Source: Heterodontus francisci
Taxonomy: Eukaryota
Assembly: GCF_036365525.1 (NCBI RefSeq)
Contig: NW_027140453.1
Span: 186,001 to 250,000, forward strand
DNA length: 64,000 nucleotides
Direction: 5' to 3'
The notes beneath the pieces are model-generated. The model ran no database searches and was not told the origin of the DNA. It worked only from the letters and a program-made list of their open reading frames with translations. Positions 9,001-39,378 of the stretch are shown piece by piece. The position numbers and the translations under genes were made by a program. Position 1 is the first letter of the stretch. Each line of letters opens with the position of its first letter.

Positions 9001-9054
9001 AGATGGAACAGGTCTTAATAAAGTACAGAGGCAGGGAAAGGGACAAAACAGCAA

Positions 9055-19215: not shown

Positions 19216-20113
19216 TTTTTTAATTCATTCATGAGATTTTGGTTGTGGTCAGCATTTATTGTCCATCCCTAATCGTCTAATTGAGAAGGTGGTGCTGAGC
19301 TGCCTTCTTGAACCACTGCAGTCATGTAGGGTCGGTAAACCCACAGTGCTGTTAGGAAGGGAGTTTCAGGATTTTGACCCAGTGACAGTGAAGAATTTTC
19401 ACAATGACTGGAGTTCAGTGCGGTGAAGAACTTAACCCTATAACTCCCGTTTAGCAGAAGGGGGTGAAATAAAACTGTCTTGGCCCCGAAACAAGGCAGC
19501 AGGCTGACGGGTCTTATTGGGTCATCGTATCATGCAGGTCAAATCCAGGCCATTCAGCCCATCGATCCTGGCCTGGCAGCTCGAAAGAGCGACTTCCTCC
19601 CATCTTTCTTCATCTTACCCTATCAACAGATTCTTCTATTCCTTTCTCACTCATGTATTTATTCAGCTCCCCTTTAACTGCATCGTCTCTATTCGACCTC
19701 AACCCATTCCATTTGGTCTGTAATTCCACATTCTCTCCGCTCCATGGGTTAAAGAACCTCCTCCTGAATTCCCAATTGGATTTATTAAGGACTACCTTAC
19801 ATTTATGATCCCTGGTTTTCATCCTCCCTGTCCAATTGCTCCCACTCCCTGTTCTTTCTGAATAACCCTGCACTTGATCTTGCAGCTTGTCTGCCTCCTT
19901 CCTACCATTACAACAGTGACTGCACGTCAAAATGTATTTGACTGGTTGAGGCTTGAGTGAAGCAGAGAACTGTCGGGCCGAATGGCGCGGATCTTTGCAT
20001 TAACTTCCATCTAGTTCTGTGCCACAAGCGCCAACACGAGTCGAGTAGGAGAATATAACTAATGACTGAAACAGGTTCAGTATCTGACAATGAAACGCCT
20101 GCAGAATCAGTGC

Positions 20114-20160
20114 TTGCAGTTGCACCTGGAGCCACTAGGTGCCAGTGTTACTCCACTGTA
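20114..20160 (+). promoter_or_regulatory. CTCF-type element upstream of V
   Basis: TTGCAGTTGC-acctgga-GCCACTAGGTGCCAGT-gtta-CTCCAC. Confidence 0.6.
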
Positions 20161-20560
20161 GCCGCTGCCCAGAACATGCTCAGACAGAGTGAGCTTTACC
20201 CACAGCAGCTCCACAGGTCAACTTGGCTGCTTCTGAAATGTTTCACTTCTCAACTATTTCACAGACACACAAAAAAAAAACGCAGTTGGACTTCATCATG
20301 TTTGGTCTTTAATAGTGACCAGAGCACCCCGGATTCGCCTGAGGCCTCCTTAGCTCAGCCCATGAAATGACCTGTCAACATGTCAACATGTGGGAGCCAA
20401 TGAACCATCAGGAATTTGCACCCCCTCCCTCCCCCCAATGGGAACATGAAACAGTGGGGAGGAGGAGACAGTAAATGTCACTCAGAACATTGAGATTTTC
20501 TGCAATAAACCAGCTCAGTGATTTCACACAATGAACACATGGATCTGTCTCCCTCCAGAG

Positions 20561-21452
20561 ATGACTGTGTCTCACCTCTGCGTTGTGTTGCTGGTGTTAA
20601 GGGGTAAGGTGGACCTCGACTGGGAGATGTCAGTCATCTTCACTGCTCTTTCCCTGTGTGACCCCATTGGGGGTTTACCCCCTTACAAGGCACCGTCACT
20701 GTGATTGTTAATTTAGCTGCTCTCTTTCTCTTTTTGTATCCCTTTCTCTATCTCTCTTTCTCTCTGTCTAACAATAAATGTTCCTCTATGTCTGTCCCTC
20801 CCAGTCTCCCTGTCTCTCTGTCTCTCTTACTCTCTCTCCCTGTCCTCTTAGCTCCTTCATGTCTGTTGCCGATGTCTAGAATGTTGCTGTTTTTCTCCCT
20901 CTGTCTGTGCTTCCCTCTCTCTCTCTCTCTCTCTGCTTCTCTCCTTTTCTCTCACTCTTTTTCACTCTATGTCTCTCTCTCTCTCTTTGCAGCTCCCCGT
21001 CTCCCACCTCTCCCTTCTTACGAAGAAACACGGGACATTTAGGGCACACAGCAGGTCATTCAGCCCATCGTGCCTCTCCCCTCTTCGTGGCCGATGTCAA
21101 TTGAAACATTGTCCCTGGGTTTATCTCTCTCTCTCTCTCTCTCTGTTTTACAGATGTGGGGGCCGTGTTGATGCAACAGATTCCCGCTTCCATATCCTAT
21201 TCCCCAGGCTCTCCAGTCAGTATCCAGTGTATTTACACAAAGGCAGATGCTGGCTCCGATATCCACTGGTACCGGTGGCATCCGGACCGTGAGCACGAGA
21301 ACCTTTTCTATTCCACCTCTGCCGGAACGGTCACCCCCTCCGGTGAGGTGGACGGTTTCACCGCCAGGAGACCCGACAACACCCATTTTTACCTGGAGTC
21401 CTCCAGCCTATGGAAAAATCAATCAGCTGTGTATTACTGTGCCTGGAGTCTG
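20561..21452 (+). CDS. TRBV: TCR beta V segment, divergent CAWS family (leader 20561-20603, V exon 21154-21452)
   Basis: Leader MTVSHLCVVLLVLR/GTAAGG; V exon ...SIQC...IHWYRW...AVYYCAWSL; 23-RSS follows. Confidence 0.92.
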
Positions 21453-21491
21453 CACAGTGACTCAGAAAGGCGCCGGAGTTCAGCAAAAACT
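21453..21491 (+). other. 23-RSS
   Basis: CACAGTG-actcagaaaggcgccggagttca-GCAAAAACT. Confidence 0.93.
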
Positions 21492-22749
21492 CTAAAGGAG
21501 GAGGAAAGCACTTGTGGGAGATAAACCTGTCTGTCTATCTCAGTGTCTTTCTGTCTCTCTGACTATCTGCGAGTTTCTGTGTCTCTTTGTGCATCTNNNN
21601 NNNNNNNNNNNNNNNNNNNNNNNNNNNNNNNNNNNNNNNNNNNNNNNNNNNNNNNNNNNNNNNNNNNNNNNNNNNNNNNNNNNNNNNNNNNNNNNNNNNN
21701 NNNNNNNNNNNNNNNNNNNNNNNNNNNNNNNNNNNNNNNNNNNNNNNNNNNNNNNNNNNNNNNNNNNNNNNNNNNNNNNNNNNNNNNNNNNNNNNNNNNN
21801 NNATATTGCACCATTTATCTATCTATTTATCTCGATCATATATATATATTTGCCATCGATTTATCTACCTGTCTCTCACCTCTCTAAATATGCATCCATC
21901 ATATATCTGACGTTTATCATCTTTCTAACACAACTATTTGCACCATACCAGTTTAATTATTGATGGATCATGATTTGTATTTTACTGATAGTTTCATCTT
22001 CTTGCTCTCCTTCGACTCAGAGTACATCAATACATTATGAATTATTAAAAATGCTGCAGCAATGTGCTCAGATCCTTCTCGTTAAGGCAGCCTCTACCTG
22101 TAAAGAACAGATTCCGAGGTGGGGTAAATGGGCTCATGGTCCTGTTGAATGAGCTGTCGGTGGTATGTGACAAGAGTTACACATAGCTCCCTATTGTACA
22201 TGTCCCCGATGATTCATACAATGCAAAAGTGAGACACCTCCCCAGATAGGTCTCTCACTGGAACACCTGCCTCCTGACAGCGGTTTGAGCATCTGTTTAA
22301 AACAGTTAACCCACTTCTTCATGACACTGTCGCTTTTCAAAGTATCTAAGATTTCACCCCAATGTAAAACATAGCCCTTGAATTGTCGTTTAACACAGGG
22401 AAAATAAATCTTTATCTGCCTAATACAAACAAGCAACTTGATGCGTCTTATATATTTATAAAATCATACAGCAGAGGCAAAGGCCATTCAGTCCATCGAG
22501 CCTGGCCCAGCTGTTCGAAAGAGCTACCCTATACAACACCAATCAGACACAAGCAACGAGAGCCAGATACAGATGGGAAGCAGTTCCTTATTCAAGCTCC
22601 TTCCGACCAGGGGGTGTTATTATTCTGTCATACCCAGAAGTGAGGGGTCAGAAGGAAACCCTGTTTCCAGTGCTGTCATTTCCGCTCTCTGCTTTATCTT
22701 CAGCCGCCTGATATTCATTCATGAACAGATTCAGCCCTCAGTCTGCAGG

Positions 22750-23415
22750 ATGCAGTTAGTCAAACTCTTCCTAATCGTCTGTTCTCTTCTTCCATGTAGG
22801 TATTCATTGTTCATAAAGATACCTGTGCTAAAATACATGCTGTGTTTTCATTCACTACTAACTTCTATCAAACTAGATTGATAAAACATCATTGAAGTCG
22901 ATTTTCTGTCATTTCTTAAACTACATACTTTACTTTCACTGTAAATAATATTGGCTTAATGAAATTTTTGACTGAATGAAAGTTATTTATATATTCGTGA
23001 CGCTACTACAGCTATCTTTAACCGATAAGTTTGCCCCAATTCTGGGTTAATTTGTCTGTCTCATATCACTTGCTACATTATTTTTCAATCTCTATATCTA
23101 TCTGTTTATTATCTATATATCTACAAATATATCATTTAACTATATATTGTCTGCCTATATAGTTATCTAGTATTATCTAATTATCTATTTGGATCGTTTA
23201 GTTGGTTATCATATGTCACAATATGTTCTAAACTTTTTTAACTATTCTCCTTATTTCTCAAGGCAAAACTCTAGCAGAGGTGATACACCATTGGCCAACT
23301 CTGGTGGCAGTGAAGGGAGGCGAACCAGCAGAATTAAACTGTTACCAGAATGACAGTAGAAAGAGCATTATGCTGTGGTATCGGCAGTATGCCGGGCAGG
23401 GGCTCACCCTAATCC
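22750..23415 (+). pseudogene. TRBV: 3'-truncated TCR V pseudogene (leader 22750-22795, V from 23263)
   Basis: Leader MQLVKLFLIVCSLLP/GTAGGT; EVIHHWP...ELNC...LWYRQYAGQGLTLI, then V homology ends; no second Cys motif and no RSS. Confidence 0.88.
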
Positions 23416-23579
23416 CCTGCAAAATTTCAAAGTCCTCGTCTACACTGTTTAATTTCTGGCACTGAGTATGTTAAAACTGAGTCACAGTCGCTGTCCGATA
23501 CTTGATTAATTAAAAGGTTAATTAATGATGTAAATAAGGCAGATAGTTAACATCACCATTGTGAAGTGATGTACAGAGT

Positions 23580-24120
23580 ATCAATCATCTACAAGGCACA
23601 AGTCAGGAGTGTGATGGAATACTCTCCACCTGCCTGGATGGATACAGCTCCAACAACACTCAAGGAGCTCAACACCAGTCAGGAAAAAAACAGCTCGCTT
23701 GATCAGCACCCCATCTACCACCTTCAACCCTCACTTCCTACGCCACAGTGGAAGCAGTGTGTACCATCGACATGATACACTGCAGCAAAGCATCGAGTGT
23801 CCTTAGACAGCACCTTCCAAACCCACCAACTCCATCACCTAGAAGGGCAAGGGCAGTAGACTCATGGGAACACCACCACCTGCAAGTTCCCCTCCAAGTC
23901 ATACACCATCCTGACTTGGAACTATATCGCCGTTTCTTCACTGTCACTGGGTCAAAATCCTGGAACTCCCTTCCTAACAGCACTGTGGGTGTACCTATCC
24001 AACATGTACTGCAGCGGTTCAAGAAGGCAGCTCACCACCACCTTCTCAAGGACAATCAGTGTTGTGAAATAATTGCTGGCCTTGCAAAAGAAATTCACGT
24101 CCCATGAACGAATAAGAAAA
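23580..24120 (+). mobile_element. CR1-like LINE 3' end (second family; minus fragment at 19220-19395)
   Basis: YKAQVRSVMEYSP..W, FTVTGSKSWNSLP, RFKKAAHHHLLK. Confidence 0.85.
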
Positions 24121-24329
24121 GATACATATATTTAAGGTCTTCCACGACTTCAAGATGCCCCAAAACAGCCAATTAACAACTGGAAAATGATGGTCAGATC
24201 CTCTGCTATCACTTCTCTTGCTTTAATTTTTTTTTAATTCATTCTGGGTGCCTCATTTCAGAGAACAGTGTACTTAAAACACGGAAGCCAATTGGTGTGC
24301 TGCACCATGTCATTGGCAGCATAAAGAGG

Positions 24330-24367
24330 CAGATAGATAGCTAGGAAGGCAGACAGACAGACATTAC

Positions 24368-24440
<73 letters not shown>

Positions 24441-24502
24441 CCGACAGATAGATCGATAGACAGACAGATAGGTAGCTAGGAAGGCAGACAGACAGACATT
24501 AC

Positions 24503-24539
<37 letters not shown>

Positions 24540-25111
24540 CCGACAGATAGATCGATAGACAGACAGATAGGTAGCTAGGAAGGCAGACAGACAGACATTA
24601 GATAGACAGACAGACAGATAGATAGCTAGGAAGGCAGAGAGACTGCCATTAGATAGATAGATAGATAGACAGATAGATAGATAGACAGACATTTGATCGA
24701 TAGACAGGCAGATAGATCGACAGACAGACAGATTGGTAGATAGACAGATAGATAGGCAGATAGATAGATAGATAGATAGATAGATCGATAGATAGATAGA
24801 TAGGTAGGTAGGAAGGCAGACAGGCAGACATTAGATCGACAGATAGACAGGCAGATAGATAGCTAGGAAGGTAGAAAGGCAGATGGCAGATAGATAGACA
24901 GACAGATAGATCGATAGACANNNNNNNNNNNNNNNNNNNNNNNNNNNNNNNNNNNNNNNNNNNNNNNNNNNNNNNNNNNNNNNNNNNNNNNNNNNNNNNN
25001 NNNNNNNNNNNNNNNNNNNNNNNNNNNNNNNNNNNNNNNNNNNNNNNNNNNNNNNNNNNNNNNNNNNNNNNNNNNNNNNNNNNNNNNNNNNNNNNNNNTA
25101 GATAGTCAAAC

Positions 25112-25166
<55 letters not shown>

Positions 25167-26080
25167 CAGACAGATAGATCGATAGACANNNNNNNNNNNN
25201 NNNNNNNNNNNNNNNNNNNNNNNNNNNNNNNNNNNNNNNNNNNNNNNNNNNNNNNNNNNNNNNNNNNNNNNNNNNNNNNNNNNNNNNNNNNNNNNNNNNN
25301 NNNNNNNNNNNNNNNNNNNNNNNNNNNNNNNNNNNNNNNNNNNNNNNNNNNNNNNNNNNNNNNNNNNNNNNNNNNNNNNNNNNNNNNNNNNNNNNNNNNN
25401 NNNNNNNNNNNNNNNNNNNNNNNNNNNNNNNNNNNNNNNNNNNNNNNNNNNNNNNNNNNNNNNNNNNNNNNNNNNNNNNNNNNNNNNNNNNNNNNNNNNN
25501 NNNNNNNNNNNNNNNNNNNNNNNNNNNNNNTAGATCGATAGACANNNNNNNNNNNNNNNNNNNNNNNNNNNNNNNNNNNNNNNNNNNNNNNNNNNNNNNN
25601 NNNNNNNNNNNNNNNNNNNNNNNNNNNNNNNNNNNNNNNNNNNNNNNNNNNNNNNNNNNNNNNNNNNNNNNNNNNNNNNNNNNNNNNNNNNNNNNNNNNN
25701 NNCAGAGAGACAGACATTAGATAGATAGATATACAGACAGATAAATAGAAAGACAGATGGGTAGACAGATAGGCAGACAGATAGATCGATTGACAGACAG
25801 ATTGATTGATAGACAGACAGATGGGTAGACAGATAGATAGGCAAATGGTCAAATAGATAGATAGACAGACAGATATGCAAATAGGTAAATATGAAGACAG
25901 ACAGACAAAAAGATAGGTAGGTAGACAGACAGACGGATTCATACAGATAGAGAGACAAACTGACACAGATAGAGAGACAGACACACAGCCATGCAGATAG
26001 ATAGATAGAGAGAAAGATAGACAGATAGCTACAGTGATAGATAGATAGATAGATAGATAGCTATATAGATAGACAGACAG
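24330..26080. repeat. (GATA)n/(GACA)n microsatellite with assembly gaps
   Basis: Direct inspection. Confidence 0.95.
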
Positions 26081-26224
26081 GCATATCTTTTTCTCCCTCT
26101 CTCCATCTATCTCTATCACTGCCTCTCTTTTTCTCTAACTGTTTTTCTCCATATCATCCTCTGTGACTCTGTCTCTCTCTCATTCCTTGGCACTTTCACA
26201 TACACTCTATCACTCCAATAATCT

Positions 26225-27815
26225 CATAGAAGGTTTAAGGCACAGAAAGAGGCCACTTGGCCCATCACATCAGTGCCGGCCGAAAAACGATCCACCTATT
26301 CTAATCACACCTTCCAGCATTTGGTCCGTAGCCCTGCAGATTACAGCACTTGAGGTGCAAATCCAGACTCCTTTTGAATGAGTTGAGGGTCTCTGCCTCA
26401 ACTACCCTTTCAGGCAGTGAGTTCCAGACCATCACCACCCTCTGGGTGAAAAATGATTTTCCTTATCTCCCCTCTAATTCTTCTACCAATCACTTTAAAT
26501 CTATGGTCCCTCATCACTGACCTCTCTGCCAAGGTGAATAGACCCTTCACATCCACTCTATCCAGGCCCCTTCAATATTTTGTACATTTCAATCAGATCT
26601 CCCCGCAGCTTTCTCTGTTCCAAGGAGAACAACCCCGGCCTATCCAATCTTTCCTCATAGCTGCATTTTCAGTTCGGGAAACATGCTTGTTAATCTCCTT
26701 TGTAACCTCTCTAGTGCAATTACATTCTTTCTGTAATGAGGTGACCAGAACTTCACACATACTCAAGTTGTGGCCTAACCAATGAGTTATGCAGTTCCAG
26801 CATAACCTCACCGCTCTTGTATTCTATACCTCAGCTAATGAAGGAAAGGATTCCATATGCCTTCTTAACCACCTTATCGACCTGTCCTGTTACCTTCAGG
26901 GATCTGTAGACATTCACTGCAAGGTCCCTCACTTCCTCTGCACTTCTCAGTATTTTCCCATTAATCGTGTATTCCTTTGCCTTGTTTGACCTCCCCAAAT
27001 GTATCACCTCACACCTCTCCAAGTTGGATTCCATTTGCCACTGTTCTGCCCATCTGACAAGACCATCAATATCTTCCTGCAGCCTACACCAATCCTCCTC
27101 GCGATCTACCACAGGGCTAATCCTTGTGTTGTCTACATACATTTGGATTATGCCCCCCTACATTTACATCCAAATCGTTAATAAATACCACAAAAAGCAG
27201 GGAACCCAGTGCTGAGCCCTGTGCAACGCCACTGGGAACAGCCCTCCAGTCGCTAAAACACCCATCAACAATTACCCTTTGTTTCCTGGCACTGAGCCAA
27301 TTTTGTATCCACCTTGCTGCATTTCCCTGGATCCCATGGGATTTTGTTTTTTTTTGAACCAGTCTGCCATGTGCAGCCTTTTCAAAAGCCTTGCTAAAAT
27401 CCAGGTAGACCACGTCAACTGCACTACCCTCATCTATCTTCCTTGTTACTTCTTCAAAAAATTCGATCAAATTGATCAAACAAGAACGTCCCTTAACAAA
27501 TCTATGCTGACTATCCTGGATTAATCTGTGCCTTTCTAAGTGACAGTTTATCCTGTCTCCCAGAATAGATTGCAATACTTTGCTCATTACGGAGGTCAGA
27601 CTGACTGGCCTGTAATTAGTCAGTCTATCCTTCCCTCCCTTTTTAAACGGAGGCACAACGTTAACAATTCTCCAATCCTCCGGCGCCACACCTGTGAGGA
27701 CTGCAAAAAGATGGTCAGACCCTCTGCTATTTCTTCTCTTGCTTCTATTTGCAGCCTAGGATTCATTTCATCCTGCCCTGGTGATTTATCAACTTTCAAG
27801 GATGCTAATCCCATT
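26225..27815 (-). mobile_element. CR1 LINE RT region, ~1.6 kb
   Basis: EDWRIVNVVP.FKKG..NYRPVSLTSV...YLDFSKAF...GVAQGSALGSLLFVVFINDLD. Confidence 0.93.
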
Positions 27816-27889
27816 AATGTTTCCTCCCTCAGCTTCGCTCCCTTAAACCCAGAGCAACCAGCAGAAAGTGTCTTAGATCCGCCGCAAAC

Positions 27890-27936
27890 ATGCCATTCAA
27901 TTTCATCGACGTTTGCTATTTTCCTTCTGTCGCTGA
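27890..27936 (+). pseudogene. Orphan, frameshifted V leader exon with partial intron; no V exon
   Basis: Homologous to the leader at 28975 but with a 1-nt insertion; intron homology stops near 28230. Confidence 0.8.
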
Positions 27937-28345
27937 GTATGTTTAAATTCTGTCACAATCACTGTTTTACATTTGATCAACTGATTAATGATCTCAACAA
28001 GACTGTGCGGCGGTGACTTGTGAAATCAGCAATCAATTATTGAATATAAGACAGTGAACTCATTAATCTGTTCCCCCTTTTTTGGCAACAAAATTGTTAA
28101 GAATATACTGTTAACCATATAACATCTACACCCACTTTTACTCATGTAGATTTCACTATTCTGCTTTACATCTGTACAGATACTGGCAGGAAATTAGGAC
28201 AAAGACTGAATTTGTATCGTTAATTCTGCGGGTAATAATCCTCTGCAGGAGAGGATGAAACACTGAGAAGGAGGATGAATTTCGGGAAGTGACTTGAAGA
28301 AGCCCACAGCATGGGTTTCACTGGGAAAGTAACAAACACAGCTTG

Positions 28346-28393
28346 TTGCAGTTGCACCATGCTGCCACTGGTCGGCGCAGTGGCTCCACTATA
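28346..28393 (+). promoter_or_regulatory. CTCF-type element upstream of V
   Basis: TTGCAGTTGC-accatgct-GCCACTGGTCGGCGCA-gtgg-CTCCAC. Confidence 0.5.
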
Positions 28394-28974
28394 TTTCGCG
28401 CCACCACAGGCTTTGGCGCCGCTGATCAATGAGTCAATTCCTCTGCTTCTGCAATCTTTTCACTTTAAAGGCTAAATGCAGTTAGATTGCCACTTTACAG
28501 TGATGTTATATGAGCCGCTGCCATCGAACTATCCACCTTCTCTTCCTCCACTACTGATTTTCATTTGCAAAAGGATGTTAATAATCCCCTGTTGTGCACC
28601 ATAAGCTCTGGAGTCACTCAAAGCAGTTATCGTTGAACCGCCCCTTGTTTTTTTCACCTACCCTCTCCAACACCTCGCTACCTTCAGAATTTCCCTCGCC
28701 GCAGCATGAAAGCAAGCTCACAAAGGGACGGGAATGAAGATATTGGCAGCAGAGTAGAAAGTGGGGTGGAAGGAGGGAAATGGAGAGAAGAAACAAGTGG
28801 AAAGGGGTGGAAGGAAGCAAACAAAAGAATGGGGGACAACTTAAAGGTAGGGGCGGGGATCATTGCCTTGAGATAACTTCCTCCTATGACGGTCCGCTCT
28901 GCCTACACCTCATCTCTCTCCCTCCCTTAAAACCCAGAGTAACCAGCAGAAAGTCTCTCAGATCCACCGCAAAC

Positions 28975-29680
28975 ATGCCTTTCAGTTTCATCGTCTTTGC
29001 TATTTCCCTTCTGGCGCTGAGTAGGTTAAAATTCTGTTCCAATCACTCTTCTACATTTGTTTAACTGAAAGGGATGATTAATGATCTCAATAAAACTGTG
29101 AAATTCAGCAATCAATCATTTAATATAAGATAGTGAACTCTATCCCCTAGTCCCCTAGTTTGGGAAGATGATGTTAACTCTTTAATGTTTGCACCCACTT
29201 GCAAGCTTGTGGATTCCACAATTCTATTTTACAGTTGTAAAGATCCAGGTTCTTGTAGGAAATTAGGACACAGACCGAATTTCCGTCATTAATTTGGTGC
29301 AACACCGACGTCCATCGTCTCAATTGTAACTCCATCGATACTAGTTCATTCCCTCTAATTTCTCTTTCTAGGTGTTTGCCGGGGTGATGTGATACATCAA
29401 TGGCCTCAGTCACTGGCTGTTAAACAACCAGGACCCGTGGAAATGAACTGTCTGCAGATAGCAAAGATTCGCAACTCCATGGACTGGTATCGTCAGTCCC
29501 CCGGCAGAGGATTCCTGTTAATCGGGTTTAACTTTCTAAGCAATGAACCTCAGTATGAAGATGGTTTTAAGAGCGGGTTTGTTATTACCAGGACTCTGGA
29601 CAATAAGAAATCCACTCTGACGATCGAGAGTGTGAACGCCACGGACGAGGCGGTGTATTTCTGTGCAGCTGGTGATGGGA
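28975..29680 (+). CDS. TRBV: TCR beta V segment, CAAGDG family (leader 28975-29020, V exon 29372-29680)
   Basis: Leader MPFSFIVFAISLLAL; DVIHQWP...EMNC...WYRQSPGRG...DEAVYFCAAGDG; 23-RSS follows. Confidence 0.92.
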
Positions 29681-29719
29681 CACAGCGGTTCAGAGTCATT
29701 GGCCGCCTTGACAAAAACC
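29681..29719 (+). other. 23-RSS
   Basis: CACAGCG-23 bp-ACAAAAACC. Confidence 0.93.
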
Positions 29720-31773
29720 CTCACATGTCTCCCTTCAAACGGGTGCATTTAACCCAGCATTCGGTGTAGAGGAGCTCTGGGTGAGGGATGCGGATCTGCA
29801 TCTGTTCAGTGCCCGTTCGAGTCGCAGAACGCCCATGTTCTAACTCCCCACAACCTCCAGACAGGCAACACACACTGTCTGTGCCCACACCTGAATAATG
29901 GCCCTTTGAAATACAATTCAACCCGAACCTCAGATAGACCACACCTGGACAATTATGCACACTGGGCACAATTCTCAGCCCGATATGCCTTGTGTAGATG
30001 ACGCCTGAAGTGCTGAGGACAGTTCAGACTTACAAATACCTTACTTAGAGCGCTTCTGGAACCCTGTGTACAGTTCTGGTCTTCATCGACCTTGGTTGGT
30101 CCAAATCTGCAGTGCTGTGCGGAGTGCTGGTCTCCATATTACACTGAGAGGTACGAGCAGAAGTGCAAAATGATTTACAAGAATGATACCAGAGCACAAA
30201 GGTTATAACTATCAGGAAAGATAGAAAAGTCTGGGATTCTTGTCCCCAGTCAAGAGAAGGCTGAGGGGTGACCTGATAGAGGTGTTCAAGATTATGAAGG
30301 AATATGATAGGGTAGAGGTGAGAAGATGTCTGCACTTGTAGGGAAGGCCAGGAATACATCATACTCACTAATAACTCCCAGAAATGAATTTATACAGAGT
30401 GGTGAGAATGTGGAATTCGGTGGCACACAGAAAAAAATGATGTGTATAACCAGATATATGTAAATGGATGCTGGATAAAAACATTAGGGAGCAGGAAATA
30501 GCACGTCATACTGATAGGGATGGATGAAGACATTGTTTATGTTCTTTCATCAGATGTGGGAATAAAATGTGAGAATAAGCTAACCAGCAATATAAACACA
30601 GATGGTAGGAGCTTTTACATAGAAAGCAAGAGAGTAGCTAAAGTTGACGTTGGTCCCTTAGAGGTAAAGACAGGAGAAATCACCATGGGGAATGGGGAAA
30701 TGGCAGTGGAATTGAACTAATATTTTGTACCTGTCTTCACAGTAGAAGACACAAGTTCCAGACCAGAAATAGGCAGTAATCTGGGGCCTAAAAAGAGTGA
30801 GGAAATTAAGGATATTCATATCAATTGAGAAAATTTCTTGGAGAAACTCGAGGGATTAAAATCTGACAAGTCCCCTGGACCAGATGGATTACATCCTAGA
30901 GTTCTAAAAGAGATAGCTGCAGAGAGAGTGGAGGCGCTGGCTATGATTTTCCAGAATTCCTTAGATTCAGGAATGGTCCCATCGGATTGAAAGCTGACAA
31001 ATGTTACACGGCTTTTCATGAAATAAGGCAGCGAGAAATCTCAGGATAAGGGATCAATCATTCCGGACTGAGATGAGGAGAAATGACTTCACTCAAAGGG
31101 TTGTGAAACATTGGAATTCTCTATCCCAGAGTGTTGTGGATGGTCCTTCATTGAATACATTTAAGGATGGGAGTTTTGATCCCTCAGGAAATCAAGGGAT
31201 ATGGGGAGCAGGCAGGAAAGTGGAATTGAAGCCCAAGATCAGCCATGATTGTATTGAATGATGGAGCAGGCTCGATGGGATATATGATCTACACCTGCTC
31301 CTATTTCTTGTGTTCTGTGGGTCTCAAGTCACATGTAGGTCAGACCAGGTAAGGACGGTGGATTTCCTTCACTAAAAGACATGAGTGAGCCAGCTGGGTG
31401 ACAGGGCCCCTTAACTGAGACTAGCTTTCAATTGCAGATTTTCTGATGAAATAATTAAATTTATTCATTAATTGAATTTAAATTCCACCATCTGACCTGG
31501 TGGGATTCGAACGCATGTCGCCTGGAGATTAGCCCCATCCTCTGGATTACCAGCTCAGTGACATGACAAGTACACCGCCATCTGCCCCAGGCTAGTCTGG
31601 AACATGGTCCCATCGGGCCGAATAGCCTGAATCTGTGCTGCATCTTCTATCTAATTCGATGTCACTAGCGTCACCAGCCGAAGCAATGGATAAAAAATGG
31701 GAAGACGGAGCAATTTCAAAGCATGTCTTCATAATGCCTATTTTATCAATTGCACTGTGCAAACCACAGGTGC

Positions 31774-31821
31774 CTGTAGTTACACATGACAGCCACGAGG
31801 TGGAGATGGAGCTCCACCGCA
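31774..31821 (+). promoter_or_regulatory. CTCF-type element (duplicate at 37946-37993)
   Basis: CTGTAGTTAC-acatgaca-GCCACGAGGTGGAGAT-ggag-CTCCAC. Confidence 0.5.
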
Positions 31822-32224
31822 GCCTGAGTCCCACTTGCTTCTGTAAAGACTGAGCGAGCAATGCAGCAGTGACTTGACCAATCTACCCAATAGTCAATTC
31901 CACTAACACTGAAACAGATTAAAATCATAACCATTCCACACAAAATAGACAATTGGATTTCCCCAAGTCTGCTCGTTCATAGTAAATGGTTTGAGCAAAC
32001 ACTTGTGATATACTAAAACAGATGATCGGAAGGAAGTAAAGAGAAGCAAATTCAGAAAACAGTGAAAGAAAAATGGAGAAGGAGGAATTTTATATAAAAA
32101 CACATATTAAGGGATGTGCACATCACTGACAAGGTCAGTATTCATTACCTATGCCGAATTGCCCTGAACTGAATGACTTGCTAGCCCATTTCAGAGGCAG
32201 TTAACAGTGAATTGACATTGCTAT

Positions 32225-32985
32225 CAGGTGATACATTTTCGCAGAAGGGAGACAGAGAGGAAATACAGACTTCATGACACAGGCCTAAAGAGTGTTCAAG
32301 GGCAGAGGGACCTGGGGGTTAATGTGCATAGATCTTTGAAGGTGGCAGGACATATTGAGATAGAGGTTCACGAAGCTTATGGGATCTTGGGATTCATGAA
32401 TAGAGGTATAAAGTACAAAAGCAGGGCAGTTATGCTCAACATATATGAGGTTTTGGTTAGGCCCCAACTTGAGCATCGAGCCCGGTTCTGGTCACCACAC
32501 TTTGGGAAGGATGTAAGGTCCTTGAGAGGGTGCAGAGTCGATCTACCGGGATGGTTCCAGGGATGAGAGATTTTAGCTGCATGGTTAGTTTGGTGAAGCT
32601 GGGGTTGTTCTCCTTGGAGCATAGGAAATTGAGGGGAGATTTGACAGAAGTGTACAAAATGAAGAGAGGTTGCAGAAAATAGACAAAGAAAATCTGTTCC
32701 CATGAGCTGTTGGATACAAGGACTGGGGGACACAGATGTAAGGTTTTGGGAAGAGATACAGGGGCGATGTGAGGAATATCTTGTTTACGCAGCGTGGTGT
32801 AATGATGTGGAACTCACTGCCTACCTGGATGCTGGAAGCAGAGAGAATGAATGATTTCAAAATGTAATTGGATGTGAACTTGGAGAGAAATAAACTTGCT
32901 TGGGGAATGGGACTAATTGGATTGCTGTATAGAGAGCTCACACGGACTCGAAGGGCCGAACGTGCTCCTCCTCTGCTGTTCTGAC
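32225..32985 (+). mobile_element. CR1 LINE 3' end
   Basis: RDLGVNVHRSLKVA...AYGILGFMNRGI...LVRPQLE...FWSPH. Confidence 0.9.
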
Positions 32986-33495
32986 TCTGCCCTCCTCGCA
33001 TTCCTGTTCACATATGCTGTTGCTAATAGAATATTTTAGAATTCGCTGACAGATCTGCAATCGACTCCCAGAATAACTGTGGTTTATTGTAAATCGATGG
33101 CTCTGATCACACGTTTGTAGGCGTTATTTTATTCAGCAACTCCTGCTCTGGGCTCCCCTATACCAACTAATACCTGATCACACCGTGGACCCTACTCAAC
33201 CCATTGAATGAAATAGAAGTAATTCCACTCTTGCCCCACAATTCTTTTGTGGAACGAGGATCTGAGTGAGTTAACAACACTTCAATCTCAGATGACCGTG
33301 GACTGGAAGCTCAACAGTTGAAGCAATCCCCTGCCATGATAACTCACTTCCTCTCCCTTACTTTCAGGCTTGCAATATCCGTGACGCCATTTCCAGTCGT
33401 CTATGTTGCACTTTTTCCCCCATGTCTTCAACAAGAGGCGCCACATTCTTCCCACCTCTCCTGCTGCCAGACCACATCTTGGTTACCTCACCAAG

Positions 33496-34301
33496 ATGGA
33501 ATTAAAACTCCTGCTCTGGGCCTTTTCATTGCTGATGCCGCGTAAGTAACTTCAGAATGCTACTATTGTTTCATTTAACCTGAGTTTCTTTAAGAAATAC
33601 ACTTAATGATCCGTATGTAATATCGTTCATTGATGTTGTCATTGTCCCCTTCATATAGAAACAGACATTGAGTTACTTTGCACTGATATTTGCTTCTATA
33701 ACCGGTGCATGATCTGCCAGACAGGACCTCACTCTTATTCTTAGAAAACTGGAATAAATTACATTTAAAACTAAATTGAGATGAGAAAAGTTGGGGAATG
33801 AACTCATTGCATAGCTTTTTCAAAGAGCTAGCACAGGCCTGCTGGGATGAACGGCCTCCTTCACATGTTGGATGATTGTCTGAGCTCATATTCGATCAGA
33901 AAATGCACTGGGATGCACTGCAGACTTTTCCTGATGTGGCTGCGTTAACTGAATCTTGGACCCTTTCCTTTCTTCCTCCCTTCCCACTACCCTAGATTGT
34001 TGTCGATGTGCCTCAGTGTCCCAGACACCCAGTGAACTGACTGTGGGACATGGGGAGAGCGCAACACTGACCTGTCAGCAGAAGGACACGGAGCACATCA
34101 CCATGCTCTGGTACCGCCAGCACCACGGGCAAGGCCCCCAGCTTCTGGTGACGGACGTGTCTGGGAGCAAGCCTACTTTCCAGGAAGAGTTCGAGAGGCG
34201 ATTCGAGGTGGTGAGAGCTGACATTCAAAGGAGCACTCTGAAAATTCAGACTGCAGGCCCCGGAGATAGGGCGATGTATTACTGCGCCGCCACTGAAGGA
34301 G
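33496..34301 (+). CDS. TRBV: TCR beta V segment, third family (leader 33496-33541, V exon 33996-34301)
   Basis: Leader MELKLLLWAFSLLMP/GTAAGT; ASVSQTP...TLTC...MLWYRQHHGQGPQLL...DRAMYYCAATEG; 23-RSS follows. Confidence 0.92.
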
Positions 34302-34340
34302 CACAATGCTTCAAACCCCTTCCACACTATGACAATAACC
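34302..34340 (+). other. 23-RSS
   Basis: CACAATG-23 bp-ACAATAACC. Confidence 0.88.
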
Positions 34341-34752
34341 ACTCAGGTTCATTGCTACAGCTATCCTCTTCTGTTCATCTCCTCGCCGTCTCGGGGTCTG
34401 ACTTTGTCTGGTTGCCTTTGCGAGTCTACATCTGTATCTTTCAGCTGCCAACCAGCTCTTATAGAGATAAATAGATGGCTCGGTAGCCTGAAAGACAGAG
34501 ATATAAACAGACCAATGGATAGATACATCTTAGTACCTTAGAATATCATCCTGTAACATTTGAATCCATCAGAAATATTACACAATATTGATCATCTGGT
34601 TAACAATTGAAATCAAAATATTGCCAGTTGTCATCGACATTCATAATCGCTGAATTGTTACAGCGCAGGAGGAGGACATTCGGCCCATCGTGTCTGCACT
34701 GGCTCTCCGAAAGAGCAATGGGTTTCACTGGGAAAGTAACAAACACAGCTTG

Positions 34753-34800
34753 TTGCAGTTGCACAATGCTGCCACTGGTCGGCGCTATGGCTCCACGGTA
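34753..34800 (+). promoter_or_regulatory. CTCF-type element upstream of V
   Basis: TTGCAGTTGC-acaatgct-GCCACTGGTCGGCGCT-atgg-CTCCAC. Confidence 0.5.
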
Positions 34801-35372
34801 TTTCGCGCCACCACAGCCTTTGGCGCCGCTGATCAATGAGCCAATTCCTCTGCTTCTGCAATCTTTCCACTTTCAATGCTAAATGCAGTTAGATTTCCAC
34901 TTTACAGTGATGTTACATGAACCGCCTCCGCTGCCATCGAACTATTCACCTTCTCTTCCTCCACTACTGATTTTAATTTGCAAAAGGATGTTAATAATCC
35001 CCTGTTCTGCACCGCTACCTCTGGAGACACCCAAAGCAGCTCTCGTTGCACCGCCCCTTGTATTTTCACCCACCTTCTCCAACACAGTTCCCCTCGCCTC
35101 GGCATGAAAGCAATCTCACAAAGGGAAGAGAGTGAAGATATTTGCAGAGGAGTGGAAAGTGGGGTGGAAGGAGGAAAATGGAGAGAAGAAAAAAGTGGAA
35201 AGGGGCGGAAGGAAGCAAACGAAAGAATGGGGGACAACTTAAAGTTAGGGGCAGGGCTCATTGCCTTGAGATAACTTCCTCTTATGACGATCCGCTCTGC
35301 CGACACCTCATCTCTCTCCCTCCCTTAAAACCCAGAGTAACCAGCAGAAAGTCTCTCAGATCCACCGCAAAC

Positions 35373-36106
35373 ATGCCTTTCAGTTTCATCGTCTTTGTTA
35401 TTTCCCTTCTGGGGCTGAGTAGGTTAAAATTCTGTCCCAATCACTCTTCTACATTTGATCAACTGAAAGGGATGATTAATGATCTTAATAAAACTCAGCG
35501 GTGGTGACTTGTGAAATCAGTAATCGATTATTTCATATCAGACAGTGAACTCATTAATCTGTCCCCTAGTTTGGGAAGACAAGTGTTATTAATATGATGT
35601 TAACTCTTTAATGTTTGCACCCACTTGCAAACTTGTGGATTCCACAATTCTATTTTACATTTGTAAAGATCCAGGTGCTTGTCGGAAATTAGGACACAGA
35701 CCGAATTTCCGTCGTTAATTTGGTGCAACACCAACGTCCATCGTCGCAATTGTAACTCCATCGATACTAGTTCATTCCCTCTAATTTCTCTTTCTAGGTG
35801 TTTGCCGGGGTGATGTGATACATCAATGGCCTCAGTCACTGGCTGTTAAACAACCAGGATCAGTGGAAATGAACTGTCTGCAGAAAGGAAAGATTCGCGA
35901 CTACATGTACTGGTATCGTCAGTCCCCCGGCAGAGGATTCCTGTTAATCGGGTTTAACTATCTAAGCAATGAACCTCAGTATGAAGAGGGTTTTAAGAGC
36001 GGGTTTGTTATTAGCAGGACTCTGGACAATAAGAAATCCACTCTGACGATGGAGAGTGTGAACGCCACGGACGAGGCGGTGTATTTCTGTGCAGCTGGTG
36101 ATGGGA
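35373..36106 (+). CDS. TRBV: TCR beta V segment, CAAGDG family paralogue (leader 35373-35418, V exon 35798-36106)
   Basis: Intact leader, V exon and RSS; 11 nt differences from the 29.4-kb V exon. Confidence 0.92.
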
Positions 36107-36145
36107 CACAGCGGTTCAGAGTCATTGGCCGCCTTGACAAAAACC
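36107..36145 (+). other. 23-RSS
   Basis: CACAGCG-23 bp-ACAAAAACC, identical to 29681-29719. Confidence 0.93.
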
Positions 36146-39100
36146 CTCACACGTCTCCCTTCAAACGGGTGCATTTAACCCAGCATTCGGTGAAGAGCAG
36201 CCCTGGCTGATCGGATGCGGATCTGCATCTGTTCAGTGCCCGTTCGAGTGGCAGAACGCCCATGTTCTAACTCCCCACAACCTCCAGACAGACAACACAC
36301 ACTGTCTCTGCCCACACCTGTATAATGGTTCATCGAACAGCTCTTCAACCCGTACCACGGTTTGACCACACCTGGAGCACTGTGCACAATTCTCAGCTCT
36401 ATATACTTTGTTTAGACGACACCTGAAGTGCTGAGGACAATGCTGAGGGGTGACCTGATAGAGGTGCTCAAGATTATGAAGGAATATGATAGGGTAGAGG
36501 AATAGAAGATGTCTGCACTTGTAGGGAAGGTCATTAATACATCATACTCACTAATAACTCCAAGAAATGAATTTACACAGAGTGGTGAGAATGTGGAATT
36601 CACTAGCACACAGAAATAAATGATGTGTATAACCAGATATATGTAAATGGATGCTGGATAAACACATTAGGGAGCAGGAAATAGCACCTCATACTGATAG
36701 GGCTGGATGAAGACATTGTTTATGTTCTTTTATCGGATGTGGGAATAAAATGTGAGAATAAGCTAACCAGCAATATAAAAACAGATGGTAGGAGCTTTTA
36801 CATAAAAAGTAAGAGAGTAGCTAAAGTTGATGTTGGCCCCTTAGAGGTAAAGACAGGAGAAATTATCATGGGGAATGGGGGAATTGAACTAATATTTTGT
36901 GTCTGTCTTCACAGTTGAAGACACAAGTTCCATCCCAGAAATAGGAAGTTATCTGGGGGCTAAAAAGAGTGAGGAAATTAAGGATTTTCATATCAATTGA
37001 GAAAAAGTGTTCGAGAAATTTGAGGGATGAAAATCTGACAAGTCCCCTGGAGCAGATGGATTACATCCCAGGGTTCTAAAAGAGATAGCTGCAGAGATAG
37101 TGGAGGCACTGGCTATGATTTTCCAGAATTCCTTAGATTCAGGAATGGTGCCATCGGATTGAACGCTGACAAATGTTACACGGCTTTTCAAAAAAGGAGG
37201 TAATGAGAAATCTCAGGACAGGGGATCAATCATTCCGAACTGAGATGAGGAGAAATTGCTTCACTCAAAGCGTTGTGAATCTTTGGAATTCTCTACCCCA
37301 GAGTGTTGTGGATGCTCCTTCATTGAATACATTTAAGGCTGGGATTTCTGATCCCTCAGGAAATCAAGGGATATGGGGAGTAGGCAGGAAAGTGGAATTG
37401 AAGCCCAAGATCAGCCATGATTGTATTGAATGACGGAGCAAGCTCGATGGGATATATGGTCTACACCTGCTCCTATTTCTTGTGTTCTGTGGGTCTGGAG
37501 TCACATGTAGACCAGACCAGGTAAGGAAGGCGGATTCCCTTCCCTAAAAGACATGAGTGAGCCAGCTGGGTGACAGGGCCCCTTAACTGAGACTAGCTTT
37601 CAATTGCAGATTTTCTGATGAAATAATTATATTTATTCATTAATTGAATTTAAATTCCACCATCTGACCTGGTGGGATTCGAACGCATGTCCCCTGGAGA
37701 TTAGCCCCATTCTCTGGATTACCAGCTCAGTGACATGACAAGTACACCACCATCTGCCCCAGGCTAGTCTGGAACATGGTCCCATCGGGCCGAATAGCCT
37801 GAATCCATGCTGCATCTTCTATCTAATTCGATGTCACCAGCGTCACCAGCCGAAGCAATGGATAAAAAATGGGAAGACGGAGCAATTTCAAAGCATGTCT
37901 TCATAATGCCTATTTTATCAATTGCACTTTGCAAATCTCAGGTGCCTGTAGTTACACATGACAGCCACGAGGTGGGGATGGAGCTCCACCGCAGCCTGAG
38001 TCCAACTTGCTTCTGTCAAGACTGACTGAGCAATGCAGCAGTGACTTGACCCATCTACCTAATAGTCAATTCCACTAACTCTGAAACAGATTAAAATCAT
38101 AACCATTCCACACAAAATAGACAACTGGATTTCCCCAAGTCTGCTCGTTCATAGTCACTGGTTTGACCAACACTTGTGATATACAAAAACAGATGATCTG
38201 AAGGAAGTAAAGAGGGGAAGCAAAGTGAGAAAACAGTGAAAGAAAAATGAAGAAGGAGACATTTTATATAAAAACACATATTCAGGGATGCGCACATCAC
38301 TGACAAGGCAAGAATTCATTACCTATGCTGAATTTCCCTTAACTGAATGACTTGCTAGTCCATTTCAGAGGCAGTTAACAGTGAACTACATTGCTATCAG
38401 GTGATGCATTTTGGCAGAAGGGAGACAGAGAGGAAATACTGACTTAATGACACAGGCCTGAAGAGTGTTCAAGGACAGGGGGACCTGGGGCTTAATGTGC
38501 ATAGATCTTTGAAGTTGGCAGGACATATTGAGAGAGAGGTTCGCAAAGCTTATGGGATCTTGGGATTCATGAATAGAGGTATAAAGTACAAAAGCAGGGA
38601 GGGCATGCTCAACATATATGAGGTTCTGGTTGGGCCCCAACTTGTGTACTGAGCCCGGTTCTGGTCACCACACTTGAGGAAGGATGTAGGGTCCTTGAGA
38701 GGGTGCAGAGGAGATTTACTGGAATGGTTCCAGGGATGAGAGAGTTTAGCTGCATGGTTAGGTTGGTGAAGCTGGGGTTGTTCTCCTTGGAGCAAAGGAG
38801 ATTGAGGGGAGATTTGATAGAAGTGTACAAAATGAAGAGAGGTTTAGATAAAGTAGACAAAGAAAAACTGTTCCCATTAGCTGATTGTACAAAGACTAGG
38901 GGACGAAGTGGATAGGAATAAAACAGAGAATAAAAGCTGCGATAAACTGAAATCTGGTGGGGAATTCACGAGAATTCTTTACCCAAAATACAGAATTCAC
39001 TGTCAGCAGAAACTGCTGAGACAAAGACAGGGAAAGGAAGAGGCCATTCAGCCCCTCAAATCTGTACCACCATTCAATGAGATCATGGCTGATCTGTGAT

Positions 39101-39378
39101 CTAACTCCATATTCCCGCCTTTGCCCCATATCCCTGAATATATTTTGGATCACAAAAACCTATTCATCTCCGATTTCAAATTAACAATTGATTCAGCATC
39201 AATTTCCGTGAGCAGAAGAGAGTTCAAACCTCTCCACCCATTGTGTGTAAAAGTGTTTCCTAATTTCACTCCTGAAAGGTCTGGCTCTAATTTTTAGTCT
39301 TTGCCTCTTAGTCCTAGATTCCCAAACCAGCGGTTATAGTTTCTCTCTATCTACTCCCAAAGACTAAATAAATACAAC

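What the first reader, a model, noticed from the sequence alone, without database searches (positions are those of the whole stretch)
20114..37993. Recurrent ~48-bp tripartite CTCF-type element upstream of V genes from different families
Seen: five co-oriented copies (20114, 28346, 31774, 34753, 37946) of yTGyAGTTrCAC...GCCACnnGnnG....-4 bp-CTCCAC with near-fixed spacing. Three are independent copies in otherwise unrelated DNA; two arise from the segmental duplication. Three sit 450-630 bp above a V leader; the 31774 copy is 1.7 kb above one, with a LINE in between. Known: the CTCF core is CCASYAGRKGGC, with an optional upstream TGCAG module 5-6 bp away read by ZF9-11, and mouse Tcra/Tcrb V segments carry oriented CTCF sites. 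Inference: a per-V loop-anchor code in a cartilaginous fish antigen receptor locus. The cores are degenerate but the upstream module and a downstream CTCCAC are kept, and the CTCCAC may bind a second factor.
Basis: partly seen in the sequence, partly recalled or inferred. Interest (0 to 1): 0.8.

Follow-up and report, generated by a model that had tools for sequence, protein, structure and literature searches.

The report
Shark V-gene upstream CTCF-like element
A 44-base sequence that looks like a two-part binding site for the genome-looping protein CTCF sits about 1 kb ahead of several shark T-cell-receptor V genes, all pointing the same way as in mice. It belongs to a larger block inherited with the genes, and binding is untested.

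Summary
The five co-oriented copies are real, at 20114, 28346, 31774, 34753 and 37946. The modules, spacing and distances to V leaders (448, 630, 621 and 1723 bp) are as described.

The claim of "independent copies in otherwise unrelated DNA" does not hold:
- 34753 and 37946 come from a 6-kb segmental duplication.
- The 20114 and 31774 blocks are old paralogues over at least 450 bp and share a LINE tail.
- 28346 shares the element plus a second block about 40-100 bp downstream.
- That leaves two lineages, A and B, and only 3 of 6 intact V genes have a proximal copy.

The CTCF reading holds up in silico. I scanned with the published upstream motif (at most 2 mismatches), an 8/9-nt gap and the published core. 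At 2 or fewer core mismatches this finds only 20114, 31774 and 37946 (null 0.1 per window). At 3 or fewer it adds 28346 and 34753 (null 0.37). All lie on the V strand, so they point toward D-J-C, as V-region CTCF sites do in mouse Tcrb and Igh.

The block is not a young high-copy repeat and does not match the window's LINE family. An old low-copy repeat is not excluded.

Verdict: a plausible shark counterpart of mammalian V-associated CTCF sites. The scan has noted related CTCF motifs elsewhere in this genome.

The parts
20114..20156 (+). Element copy A1. Upstream module 20114-20125, core CCACTAGGTGCC 20132-20143, CTCCAC 20151-20156. Lies 448 bp before the leader ATG of V 21156-21452.
   Evidence: upstream module 2 mismatches, gap 8, core 1 mismatch
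28346..28389 (+). Element copy B. Core CCACTGGTCGGC is weak, 3 mismatches in the 12-mer. Lies 630 bp before the leader ATG 28976 of V 29374-29679.
31774..31817 (+). Element copy A2. Core CCACGAGGTGGA has 2 mismatches in the 12-mer. An old paralogue of the A1 block. Lies 1723 bp before the leader ATG 33497 of V 33998-34300, with a LINE in between.
34753..34796 (+). Element copy B', the recent duplicate of B (41/44 identical, all 3 changes in spacers). Lies 621 bp before leader ATG 35374 of V 35800-36105.
37946..37989 (+). Element copy A2', the recent duplicate of A2 (43/44 identical). Followed by a LINE, then the V fragment 39355-39517, then V 40733-41026 (leader ATG 40575, 2629 bp away).
20210..20249 (+). 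Second conserved block of A1 (..GTCAAC..CTGCTTCTGAAATGTTTCACTT).
   Evidence: A1 vs B, p about 0.01
28426..28466 (+). Second conserved block of B (CAATGAGTCAATTCCTCTGCTTCTGCAATCTTTTCACTT). Its first half matches A2 and its second half matches A1.
31886..31915 (+). Second conserved block of A2 (CAATAGTCAATTCCACT...).
   Evidence: A2 vs B, p about 0.025
19950..20040 (+). LINE 3' tail (GGGCCGAATGGC..) upstream of A1, homologous to the tail at 31590-31680 upstream of A2.
   Evidence: 67% identity, score 43 against null 17.6
31590..31680 (+). LINE 3' tail upstream of A2. Its duplicate is at about 37762-37852.
20562..20603 (+). Leader exon of V-A1. RNA contigs of close paralogues splice from 20603 to a V-exon start like that at 21154.
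   Evidence: loose end behind 20603 reads like the V-exon start
21154..21491 (+). V exon of V-A1 and its 23-spacer RSS (heptamer at 21453).
29374..29719 (+). V exon of V-B and its 23-spacer RSS (heptamer at 29681).

Best explanation
The element is the best-conserved part of a roughly 150-250-bp upstream block that has travelled with TCR V genes of at least two families as they duplicated. It is most likely a two-part CTCF site.

Inferred mechanism:
- The core is read by zinc fingers 3-7 and the TGYAGTT module 8-9 nt upstream by fingers 9-11.
- The fixed CTCCAC 7 nt downstream lies where fingers 1-2 would sit.
- All copies lie on the V coding strand. Bound CTCF would therefore face its N-terminus toward the V gene and the D-J-C end.
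- It would stall cohesin that extrudes from the recombination-centre side. That holds the V promoter and the RSS, about 1.34 kb downstream, at the loop base.
- It may also shield the promoter from the LINE-rich DNA upstream.

Shown here: sequence, spacing, orientation, position, homology and copy-number class. Inferred: CTCF occupancy, loop anchoring and any effect on V usage.
For: - Composite scan with literature consensi: upstream motif CTGCAGTTCC (PMC12885311), core CCASYAGRKGGC (PMC6746451), gap 8/9 nt. At 2 or fewer mismatches in each part it hits only 20114, 31774 and 37946 (null 0.1 per window). At 3 or fewer core mismatches it adds 28346 and 34753 (null 0.37). All hits are on the + strand.
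- The two spacings seen differ by one base. If the longer published core starts 3 nt before CCAS (an assumption from my recollection of the matrix, not checked here), they correspond to the known 5- and 6-bp variants (PMC9004084).
- TGYAGT-N12-CCAS occurs 8 times against 0.69 expected.
- The element is the top local alignment between the upstream kilobases of V-A1 and V-B: score 34 against null 23.2 +/- 2.4.
- 23 of 44 positions are invariant in three lineages. The V exons themselves are 22-35% identical in protein.
- Homology between the A and B lineages starts at the element; there is none upstream of it.
- No match to the window's abundant LINE family or to any other place in the 64 kb. No Rfam or tRNA hit.
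- The same RNA sample that covers the leader has zero depth on 19981-20439, which contains the element.
- Context from papers: the two-part motif is conserved from lamprey to human (PMC5504073). A CTCF orientation code exists in skate (PMC10115646). Mouse Tcrb has 18 V-region CTCF sites, several at promoters, all facing D-J (PMC5859386, PMC10772921). Mouse VH has an 'upstream' class about 800 bp from leaders (PMC6746451).
Against: - The core, which CTCF needs most, is the least conserved module. The B core has 3 mismatches in 12, including the A of the AG pair. The plain core is not enriched in the window: 5 matches against 3.0 expected at up to 1 mismatch.
- The strongest conservation is in TGYAGTTRCAC, which goes beyond the published upstream motif. 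A second GCAGTTrGA lies 130-166 bp downstream, hinting at another factor.
- Between A1 and A2 the element (69-70%) is no better kept than the shared, presumably neutral LINE tail (67%).
- Recent duplicates give no significant constraint: 1 change in 66 module positions against 4.1 expected, P = 0.08.
- There are only two deep lineages.
- Three intact V genes lack a copy.
- The 8/9-nt gap was fixed after seeing the data.
Confidence: 0.5

Rival explanations
1. The block is a distal part of the V promoter bound by lymphoid transcription factors rather than CTCF. Candidates are Myb-type CAGTTR sites in the upstream module and in block 3, E-box-like CACCTG/CACATG in the spacer, and CCAAT/GTCAAT in block 2. 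On this view the CTCF likeness is incidental.
For: - The best-kept bases are GCAGTTGCAC, not the core.
- A second GCAGTTGGAC / GCAGTTAGAT lies 130-166 bp downstream in A1 and B.
- Block 2 is conserved too.
- The A2 copies, which have lost their own V gene, carry TAGTTA and CAATTG instead of CAGTTR.
- The position, about 300-450 bp upstream of the transcript start zone, fits a promoter-distal element.
Against: - The short motifs named are frequent by chance and were recalled from general knowledge, not tested against matrices.
- The E-box is not kept in B.
- This view does not explain the fixed register of upstream module, GCCAC and CTCCAC over 44 bp.
- It does not explain the composite CTCF match with null 0.1 per window.
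Confidence: 0.2
2. The copies are relics without function of their own. They would be pieces of an old low-copy repeat or of duplicated flanks, possibly spread together with the adjacent LINE tail, that happen to retain a CTCF-like stretch.
For: - A1 and A2 share a LINE tail and about 450 bp of flank, and the element is no more similar than that tail.
- Summed contig depth on 20116-20277 is 310-820 against a baseline of 64 and against 170-290 on the leader. So more copies of the block than of the leader exist at 80% likeness or more.
- The depth boundary at about 20263-20277, and contigs with other flanks (loose ends at 20103 and 20263), look like a unit of about 160 bp.
- The LINE tail, a known high-copy family, shows a similar depth of 350-640. 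Depth therefore cannot exclude an old family.
- The constraint test between recent duplicates is not significant.
Against: - No other copy in 64 kb that holds 22 LINE tails.
- No terminal repeats, target-site duplications, tRNA or Rfam similarity.
- All copies are co-oriented with V genes.
- The two deep lineages sit 1335-1354 bp from an RSS.
- A and B V exons have diverged to 33% protein identity while 30 of 43 element bases are kept.
- Chance CTCF likeness of an arbitrary block is about 1e-4, my estimate from the per-position null rate.
Confidence: 0.25

Closest known systems
V-region CTCF binding elements of mouse Tcrb (18 sites, several at or near V-beta promoters; PMC5859386, PMC10772921, PMC4291525)
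   Same: The locus type is the same (TCR-beta-like V cluster). The sites lie near V promoters, all in one orientation facing D-J-C, and not every V has one.
   Different: The mouse sites are defined by ChIP-seq, and one of them (the Trbv1 site) by mutation as well. Here there is only sequence. The shark copies have weaker cores and a very well kept upstream module. The shark sites sit about 450-630 bp upstream of the leader.
'Upstream' class of VH-associated CTCF sites in mouse and human Igh (PMC6746451)
   Same: They lie upstream of V leader exons (one subset at about 800 bp). More than 98% are in one orientation relative to V transcription. Their locus-specific consensus differs from the genome-wide motif.
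   Different: That is a heavy-chain locus of mammals. The consensus there (GACCAGCAGGGGGC) has a strong G-rich core. No conserved upstream module or CTCCAC is described.
Two-part (upstream + core) CTCF motif, with optional downstream module (PMC12885311, PMC5504073, PMC9004084)
   Same: Order, strand and spacing of the upstream module and core agree. The third module sits at a fixed distance on the ZF1-2 side, and GCTCCA shares 4 of 6 bases with the reported GAGCCA.
   Different: The published upstream motif is CTGCAGTTCC, whereas here it is yTGyAGTTrCAC. In the literature the core is the obligatory part, but here it is the most variable. Whether CTCCAC corresponds to the published downstream motif is not established.
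45-bp CTCF-motif minisatellites behind V RSSs in this same genome (earlier scan notes s1-872038, s1-873882 and others)
   Same: Same genome and locus type. The CTCF-like motifs are co-oriented with V genes.
   Different: Those are tandem arrays just 3' of the RSS with strong cores. These are single copies about 1.3 kb 5' of the RSS. I could not see their sequences, so relatedness is untested.

Membership tests
CTCF binding site, two-part type | Core matching CCASYAGRKGGC | tested here: inconclusive
   Mismatches in the 12-mer are 1 for A1, 2 for A2/A2' and 3 for B/B'. The plain core at up to 1 mismatch is not enriched in the window: 5 against 3.0.
CTCF binding site, two-part type | Upstream motif (CTGCAGTTCC-like) on the same strand, 5' of the core, at the canonical spacing | tested here: met
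   The upstream module is 8/10 in all copies, with an 8- or 9-nt gap to CCAS. The composite match has null 0.1-0.37 per window. The spacing variants are reported in PMC9004084 and PMC12885311.
CTCF binding site, two-part type | Occupancy by CTCF in cells or in vitro | not testable with these tools
   No ChIP, CUT&Tag or EMSA data for this species are on hand.
V-associated CTCF elements of antigen receptor loci | Located at stereotyped positions next to V segments | tested here: met
   Distances are 448, 630 and 621 bp to the leader ATG, and 1339, 1335 and 1354 bp to the RSS heptamer, for A1, B and B'. A2 and A2' are displaced by a LINE.
V-associated CTCF elements of antigen receptor loci | Uniform orientation toward the D-J-C end | tested here: met
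   All 5 copies are on the + strand, the strand of 5 of the 6 intact V genes, whose 3' RSSs imply D-J downstream. A D-J pair 1.1 Mb downstream is reported only by an unchecked scan note (s1-871847).
V-associated CTCF elements of antigen receptor loci | One site per V ('per-V code') | tested here: not met
   3 of 6 intact V genes have a proximal copy. A PWM from the three lineages finds no further copy. In mouse Tcrb, too, several V genes have none (PMC5859386).
Interspersed repeat / transposable element | Many dispersed copies unrelated to V genes | tested here: inconclusive
   There is no other copy in the window. Summed contig depth is about 5-13 times baseline, against 120-230 times for the adjacent SINE-like piece. 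Where the extra copies lie in the genome could not be seen.
Interspersed repeat / transposable element | Structural hallmarks (terminal repeats, target duplications, pol III head, LINE-type tail at its 3' end) | tested here: not met
   No inverted or direct terminal repeats. No tRNA or Rfam match. The LINE tail lies 5' of the block in sense orientation, so the block is 3' flank, not part of that LINE.

The most novel reading that the evidence does not exclude
Cartilaginous fish carry a V-gene-specific, tripartite class of CTCF site (strong ZF9-11 module, tolerant core, fixed CTCCAC on the ZF1-2 side). It would have been kept at a fixed distance of about 1.34 kb from the RSS since V families diverged. 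V-anchored loop extrusion would then be an ancestral feature of jawed-vertebrate antigen receptor loci, with a locus-specific binding grammar.
Probability: 0.15. Interest if true: 0.7.

Novelty: new member of a known kind. Interest (0 to 1): 0.4.

Why it matters
V-associated CTCF sites steer V(D)J recombination in mouse Igh and Tcrb, but nothing is known for cartilaginous fish, the oldest lineage with RAG-based receptors. A conserved, oriented, two-part CTCF-like element upstream of shark V genes would suggest that loop-extrusion control of V choice is ancestral. It also gives concrete 44-bp targets for ChIP, EMSA and Hi-C in shark thymus. As it stands it is a sequence-based candidate resting on two deep lineages in one window.

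Tried and rejected
- Metagenome scans for the full pattern, with 6-nt and 5-nt spacers: 0 hits. This says nothing, as the collection is not expected to hold shark DNA.
- LINE origin: rejected. The blocks match no other part of the window on either strand, and other LINE tails have unrelated 3' flanks.
- tRNA- or SINE-head or other RNA family: no hit.
- Extra degenerate copies upstream of V 18221-18514(-), 33998-34300 and 40733-41026: none found. The TTGTAGTGACAC at 39595 is within the chance expectation.
- Constraint from the recent duplicates: not significant. An earlier run used wrong coordinates for the third module and is superseded.
- A published CTCF matrix: the held supplement contains none, so IUPAC consensi were used.
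- Copy number by read laying: only contigs were available. Old diverged copies escape the 80% threshold, so the test excludes a young high-copy repeat only.
- Scan-note searches by sequence and by relatives: blank. Per the operators, this means nothing.
- ZNF143/SBS and RFX X-box readings were considered from memory. The order or half-sites do not fit, and they were not tested formally.
- Spliced V models were not joined. Exons were searched separately.


Full report
**Setting.** The window is a TCR V cluster of a shark.
- Six intact V exons lie at 18221-18514(-), 21156-21452, 29374-29679, 33998-34300, 35800-36105 and 40733-41026. V fragments lie at 23274-23447 and 39355-39517.
- 23-spacer RSSs follow the V exons read in full.
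- The V exon at 21156 finds V-set proteins of Scyliorhinus torazame and Chiloscyllium punctatum.
- The best single-domain PDB matches of V 33998-34300 are TCR beta chains. The other two V types give generic V-set matches.
- The V genes fall into three families: A (21156, 40733, 18221), B (29374, 35800) and C (33998). Between families, identity is 22-35% in protein. Within A it is 40-63%.

**Observation.** The five copies exist at the stated places and only there.
- YTGYAGTTRCAC matches exactly at 20114, 28346, 31774, 34753 and 37946, all on the + strand.
- In each, GCCAC follows after 5 nt (20114) or 6 nt. CTCCAC starts exactly 7 nt after the 12-mer core. To the end of CTCCAC the element is 43-44 bp.
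- The arrangement TGYAGT-N12-CCAS occurs 8 times against 0.69 expected. Three of the eight are tandem units at 56203-56361 and one looks like chance.
- Leader ATGs are at 20562, 28976, 35374, 33497 and 40575. The element-to-leader distances are therefore 448, 630, 621, 1723 and 2629 bp.
- None of the assembly gaps lies inside an element or inside any measured interval. Continuity across the gaps was not tested and they were left alone.

**The copies are not independent islands.**
- A self-comparison shows a 6-kb segmental duplication: 28308-30021 matches 34714-36439 at 90%, and 30254-32731 matches 36436-38904 at 92.6%. This accounts for 34753 and 37946.
- The 20114 block (A1) and the 31774 block (A2) are homologous over at least 450 bp.
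- They share the 3' tail of the window's commonest LINE family. The GGGCCGAATGGCCT motif occurs 22 times against 0.15 expected. The tail ends 77-97 bp upstream of the element.
- Other copies of that tail have unrelated 3' flanks. The tail was therefore inserted once, upstream of the element, before A1 and A2 separated.
- Segment identities between A1 and A2 are: LINE tail 67%, element 69%, block 2 57%, and the next 80 bp 61%. Between these two, the element is no better kept than presumably neutral DNA.
- A2' is followed by a LINE and then by a family-A V fragment (39355-39517). A2 is therefore probably the upstream block of a decayed family-A V gene. Its position 1.7 kb ahead of the family-C V would then be a by-product of the recent duplication.
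- The B block (28346) shares with A the element: 30/43 with A1 and 27/44 with A2, with 23/44 invariant in all three.
- B also shares a collinear second block about 40-100 bp downstream. Its second half matches A1 (CTGCTTCTGmAATnTTTCACTT, p about 0.01). Its first half matches A2 (CAATnAGTCAATTCC, p about 0.025).
- Nothing upstream of the element is shared between A and B. The element marks the 5' edge of what V-A and V-B upstream regions have in common.
- The evidence thus rests on two deep lineages, not three.

**Is it a repeat?**
- Within the window, no. Local alignment of the blocks against all other DNA on both strands gives noise-level scores. A PWM from the three lineages finds nothing between score 58 and 6, and the null reaches 9.8.
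- There is no tRNA or Rfam similarity and there are no terminal repeats.
- Genome-wide, only Logan contigs of DNA runs of the same organism could be laid. The table gives summed contig depth at 80% likeness or more.

| Region | Summed contig depth |
|---|---|
| 20278-20358 (baseline, two contigs) | about 64 |
| 20116-20277 (element region) | 310-820 |
| LINE tail | 350-640 |
| Leader | 170-290 |
| 19900-19953 (SINE-like piece) | 7,900-14,800 |

- The block is therefore not a young high-copy repeat. It does exist in roughly 5-13 times baseline copies, more than its own leader exon.
- Some contigs carry 20103-20253 with other flanks. One of these, in a run labelled as another organism, is 149/151 identical.
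- This fits a module that is better conserved than the genes it accompanies. It equally fits a low-copy unit of about 160 bp.
- The LINE tail, known to be high-copy, shows no higher depth. The test therefore cannot exclude an old family.
- In the RNA run from the same sample as the genome, depth is zero on 19981-20439 and 176-254 on the leader. Contigs from close paralogues splice from 20603 to a V-exon start like that at 21154. The element therefore lies in untranscribed DNA about 300-450 bp upstream of the transcript start zone.

**Is it CTCF-like?**
- I used consensi taken from papers: upstream motif CTGCAGTTCC (PMC12885311) and core CCASYAGRKGGC(RS) (PMC6746451).
- All copies match the upstream motif at 8/10. 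The gap to CCAS is 8 or 9 nt, inside the 7-10 bp spacer of PMC12885311. If the longer published core starts 3 nt before CCAS (my recollection of the matrix, not checked here), this is also the 5/6-bp pair of PMC9004084.
- The composite, with at most 2 upstream-motif mismatches and at most 2 core mismatches, hits only A1, A2 and A2' (null 0.1 per window, 60 Markov sequences). With at most 3 core mismatches it adds B, B' and one hit in a LINE-tail tandem (null 0.37). No hit is on the minus strand.
- An arbitrary conserved 44-mer would look like this with a probability of roughly 1e-4. That is my estimate from the per-position null rate.
- The gap was chosen after seeing the data. Allowing 7-10 nt would about double the null.
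- The plain core is not enriched: 5 against 3.0 at up to 1 mismatch. The B core (CCACTGGTCGGC) is poor.
- CTCCAC sits where a downstream, ZF1-2-side module has been reported. GAGCCA lies 2 bp after a longer core (PMC9004084), and GCTCCA shares 4 of its 6 bases. This is a lead, not a match.

**Orientation and position.**
- The motif strand equals the V coding strand. V genes with 3' RSSs join by deletion to D-J segments downstream.
- A forward site presents the CTCF N-terminus to its 3' side (PMC12885311, PMC10772921). That is toward the V gene and D-J-C.
- This is the arrangement of all V-region sites in mouse Tcrb and Igh (PMC5859386, PMC6746451).
- The two-part motif is conserved from lamprey to human (PMC5504073), and skate has a CTCF orientation code (PMC10115646).
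- Only 3 of 6 intact V genes have a proximal copy. The inverted V 18221-18514 has none on its strand. A strict per-V code is therefore not met. In mouse Tcrb several V genes also lack a site.

**Constraint.**
- The recent duplicates differ at 3 (B/B') and 1 (A2/A2') of 44 positions. All three B changes are in spacers.
- Against local rates of 7.3% and 5.1%, this is 1 change in 66 module positions against 4.1 expected (P = 0.08). For the whole element it is 4 against 5.5. That is suggestive at most.
- The main argument for selection is the A-B comparison. The element is the top local alignment of the two upstream kilobases: score 34 against null 23.2 +/- 2.4, null maximum 30. The V exons have drifted to 33% protein identity.

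**Verdict.**
- Most likely (0.5): a V-upstream, forward-oriented two-part CTCF site inherited with V genes. It would be a shark counterpart of mammalian V-associated CTCF elements, with an unusually dominant upstream module.
- Rival (0.2): a promoter-distal module for other factors. The conserved GCAGTTR occurs twice per block.
- Rival (0.25): a functionless relic or low-copy unit.
- The scan has already noted CTCF-type motifs at V genes on other DNA of this genome: minisatellites behind RSSs, and one unchecked note of promoter-upstream motifs. I could not compare sequences.

Noticed in passing
window 56129-56361: A perfect CTCF core (CCACTAGGTGGC) lies on the minus strand at 56129-56140. It is followed at 56203-56361 by three 52-bp tandem units, each with a two-part motif on the plus strand (TGCAGT-N12-CCAGCAGATGGAGATG). 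Together they form a divergent pair. The unit is 24/40 identical to the A2 element by hand count, including TGGAGATG.
   Followed up: partly
window 20114-21453, 28346-29681, 34753-36107: The distance from the element to the RSS heptamer is nearly constant (1339, 1335, 1354 bp). Yet the leader position (448 against 630 bp) and the intron length differ, and the intervening DNA is not homologous. With two independent lineages this may be coincidence.
   Followed up: no
window 19950-20040, 31590-31680, 34673-34746: LINE tails lie on the 5' side of the element in A1, A2/A2' and B'. In A a sense tail ends 77-97 bp upstream. In B' an antisense LINE fragment ends within about 10-30 bp. Insertions seem tolerated up to, but not inside, the block of V genes that are intact.
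   Followed up: partly
window 20282-20291 and 28478-28487: A second copy of the upstream-module core (GCAGTTGGAC, GCAGTTAGAT) lies 130-166 bp downstream of the element in A1 and B. In A2 it is degenerate (CAATTGGAT).
   Followed up: no
window 28364-28389 and 31798-31825: There are short inverted repeats inside the element: GCCACTG..CAGTGGC in B and GGTGGAG..CTCCACC in A2. They are not shared in the same form by A1 (and reading of the sequence).
   Followed up: no
window 19906-19948: A very high-copy, SINE-like fragment with summed contig depth 7,900-14,800. Other copies run on with CTGTAAAGTGCTTTGGGA....
   Followed up: no
window 20103-20253: A 207-nt contig from a run labelled as another organism (X5, guessed RNA) matches at 149/151. 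It has a different left flank. Neighbouring contigs of that run are 90-94% identical.
   Followed up: no
window 23274-23447 and 39355-39517: Two V-exon fragments: a 5' half most like families B and C, and a 3' part with RSS that is 93% identical to V 40733-41026. Neither has an element at the expected distance.
   Followed up: partly
window 42918-45642: A 42-bp minisatellite of about 63 units lies after the gap that follows V 40733-41026. Its unit (..TCTCCACAGGGAGAGTCACT) is not a good CTCF match.
   Followed up: no
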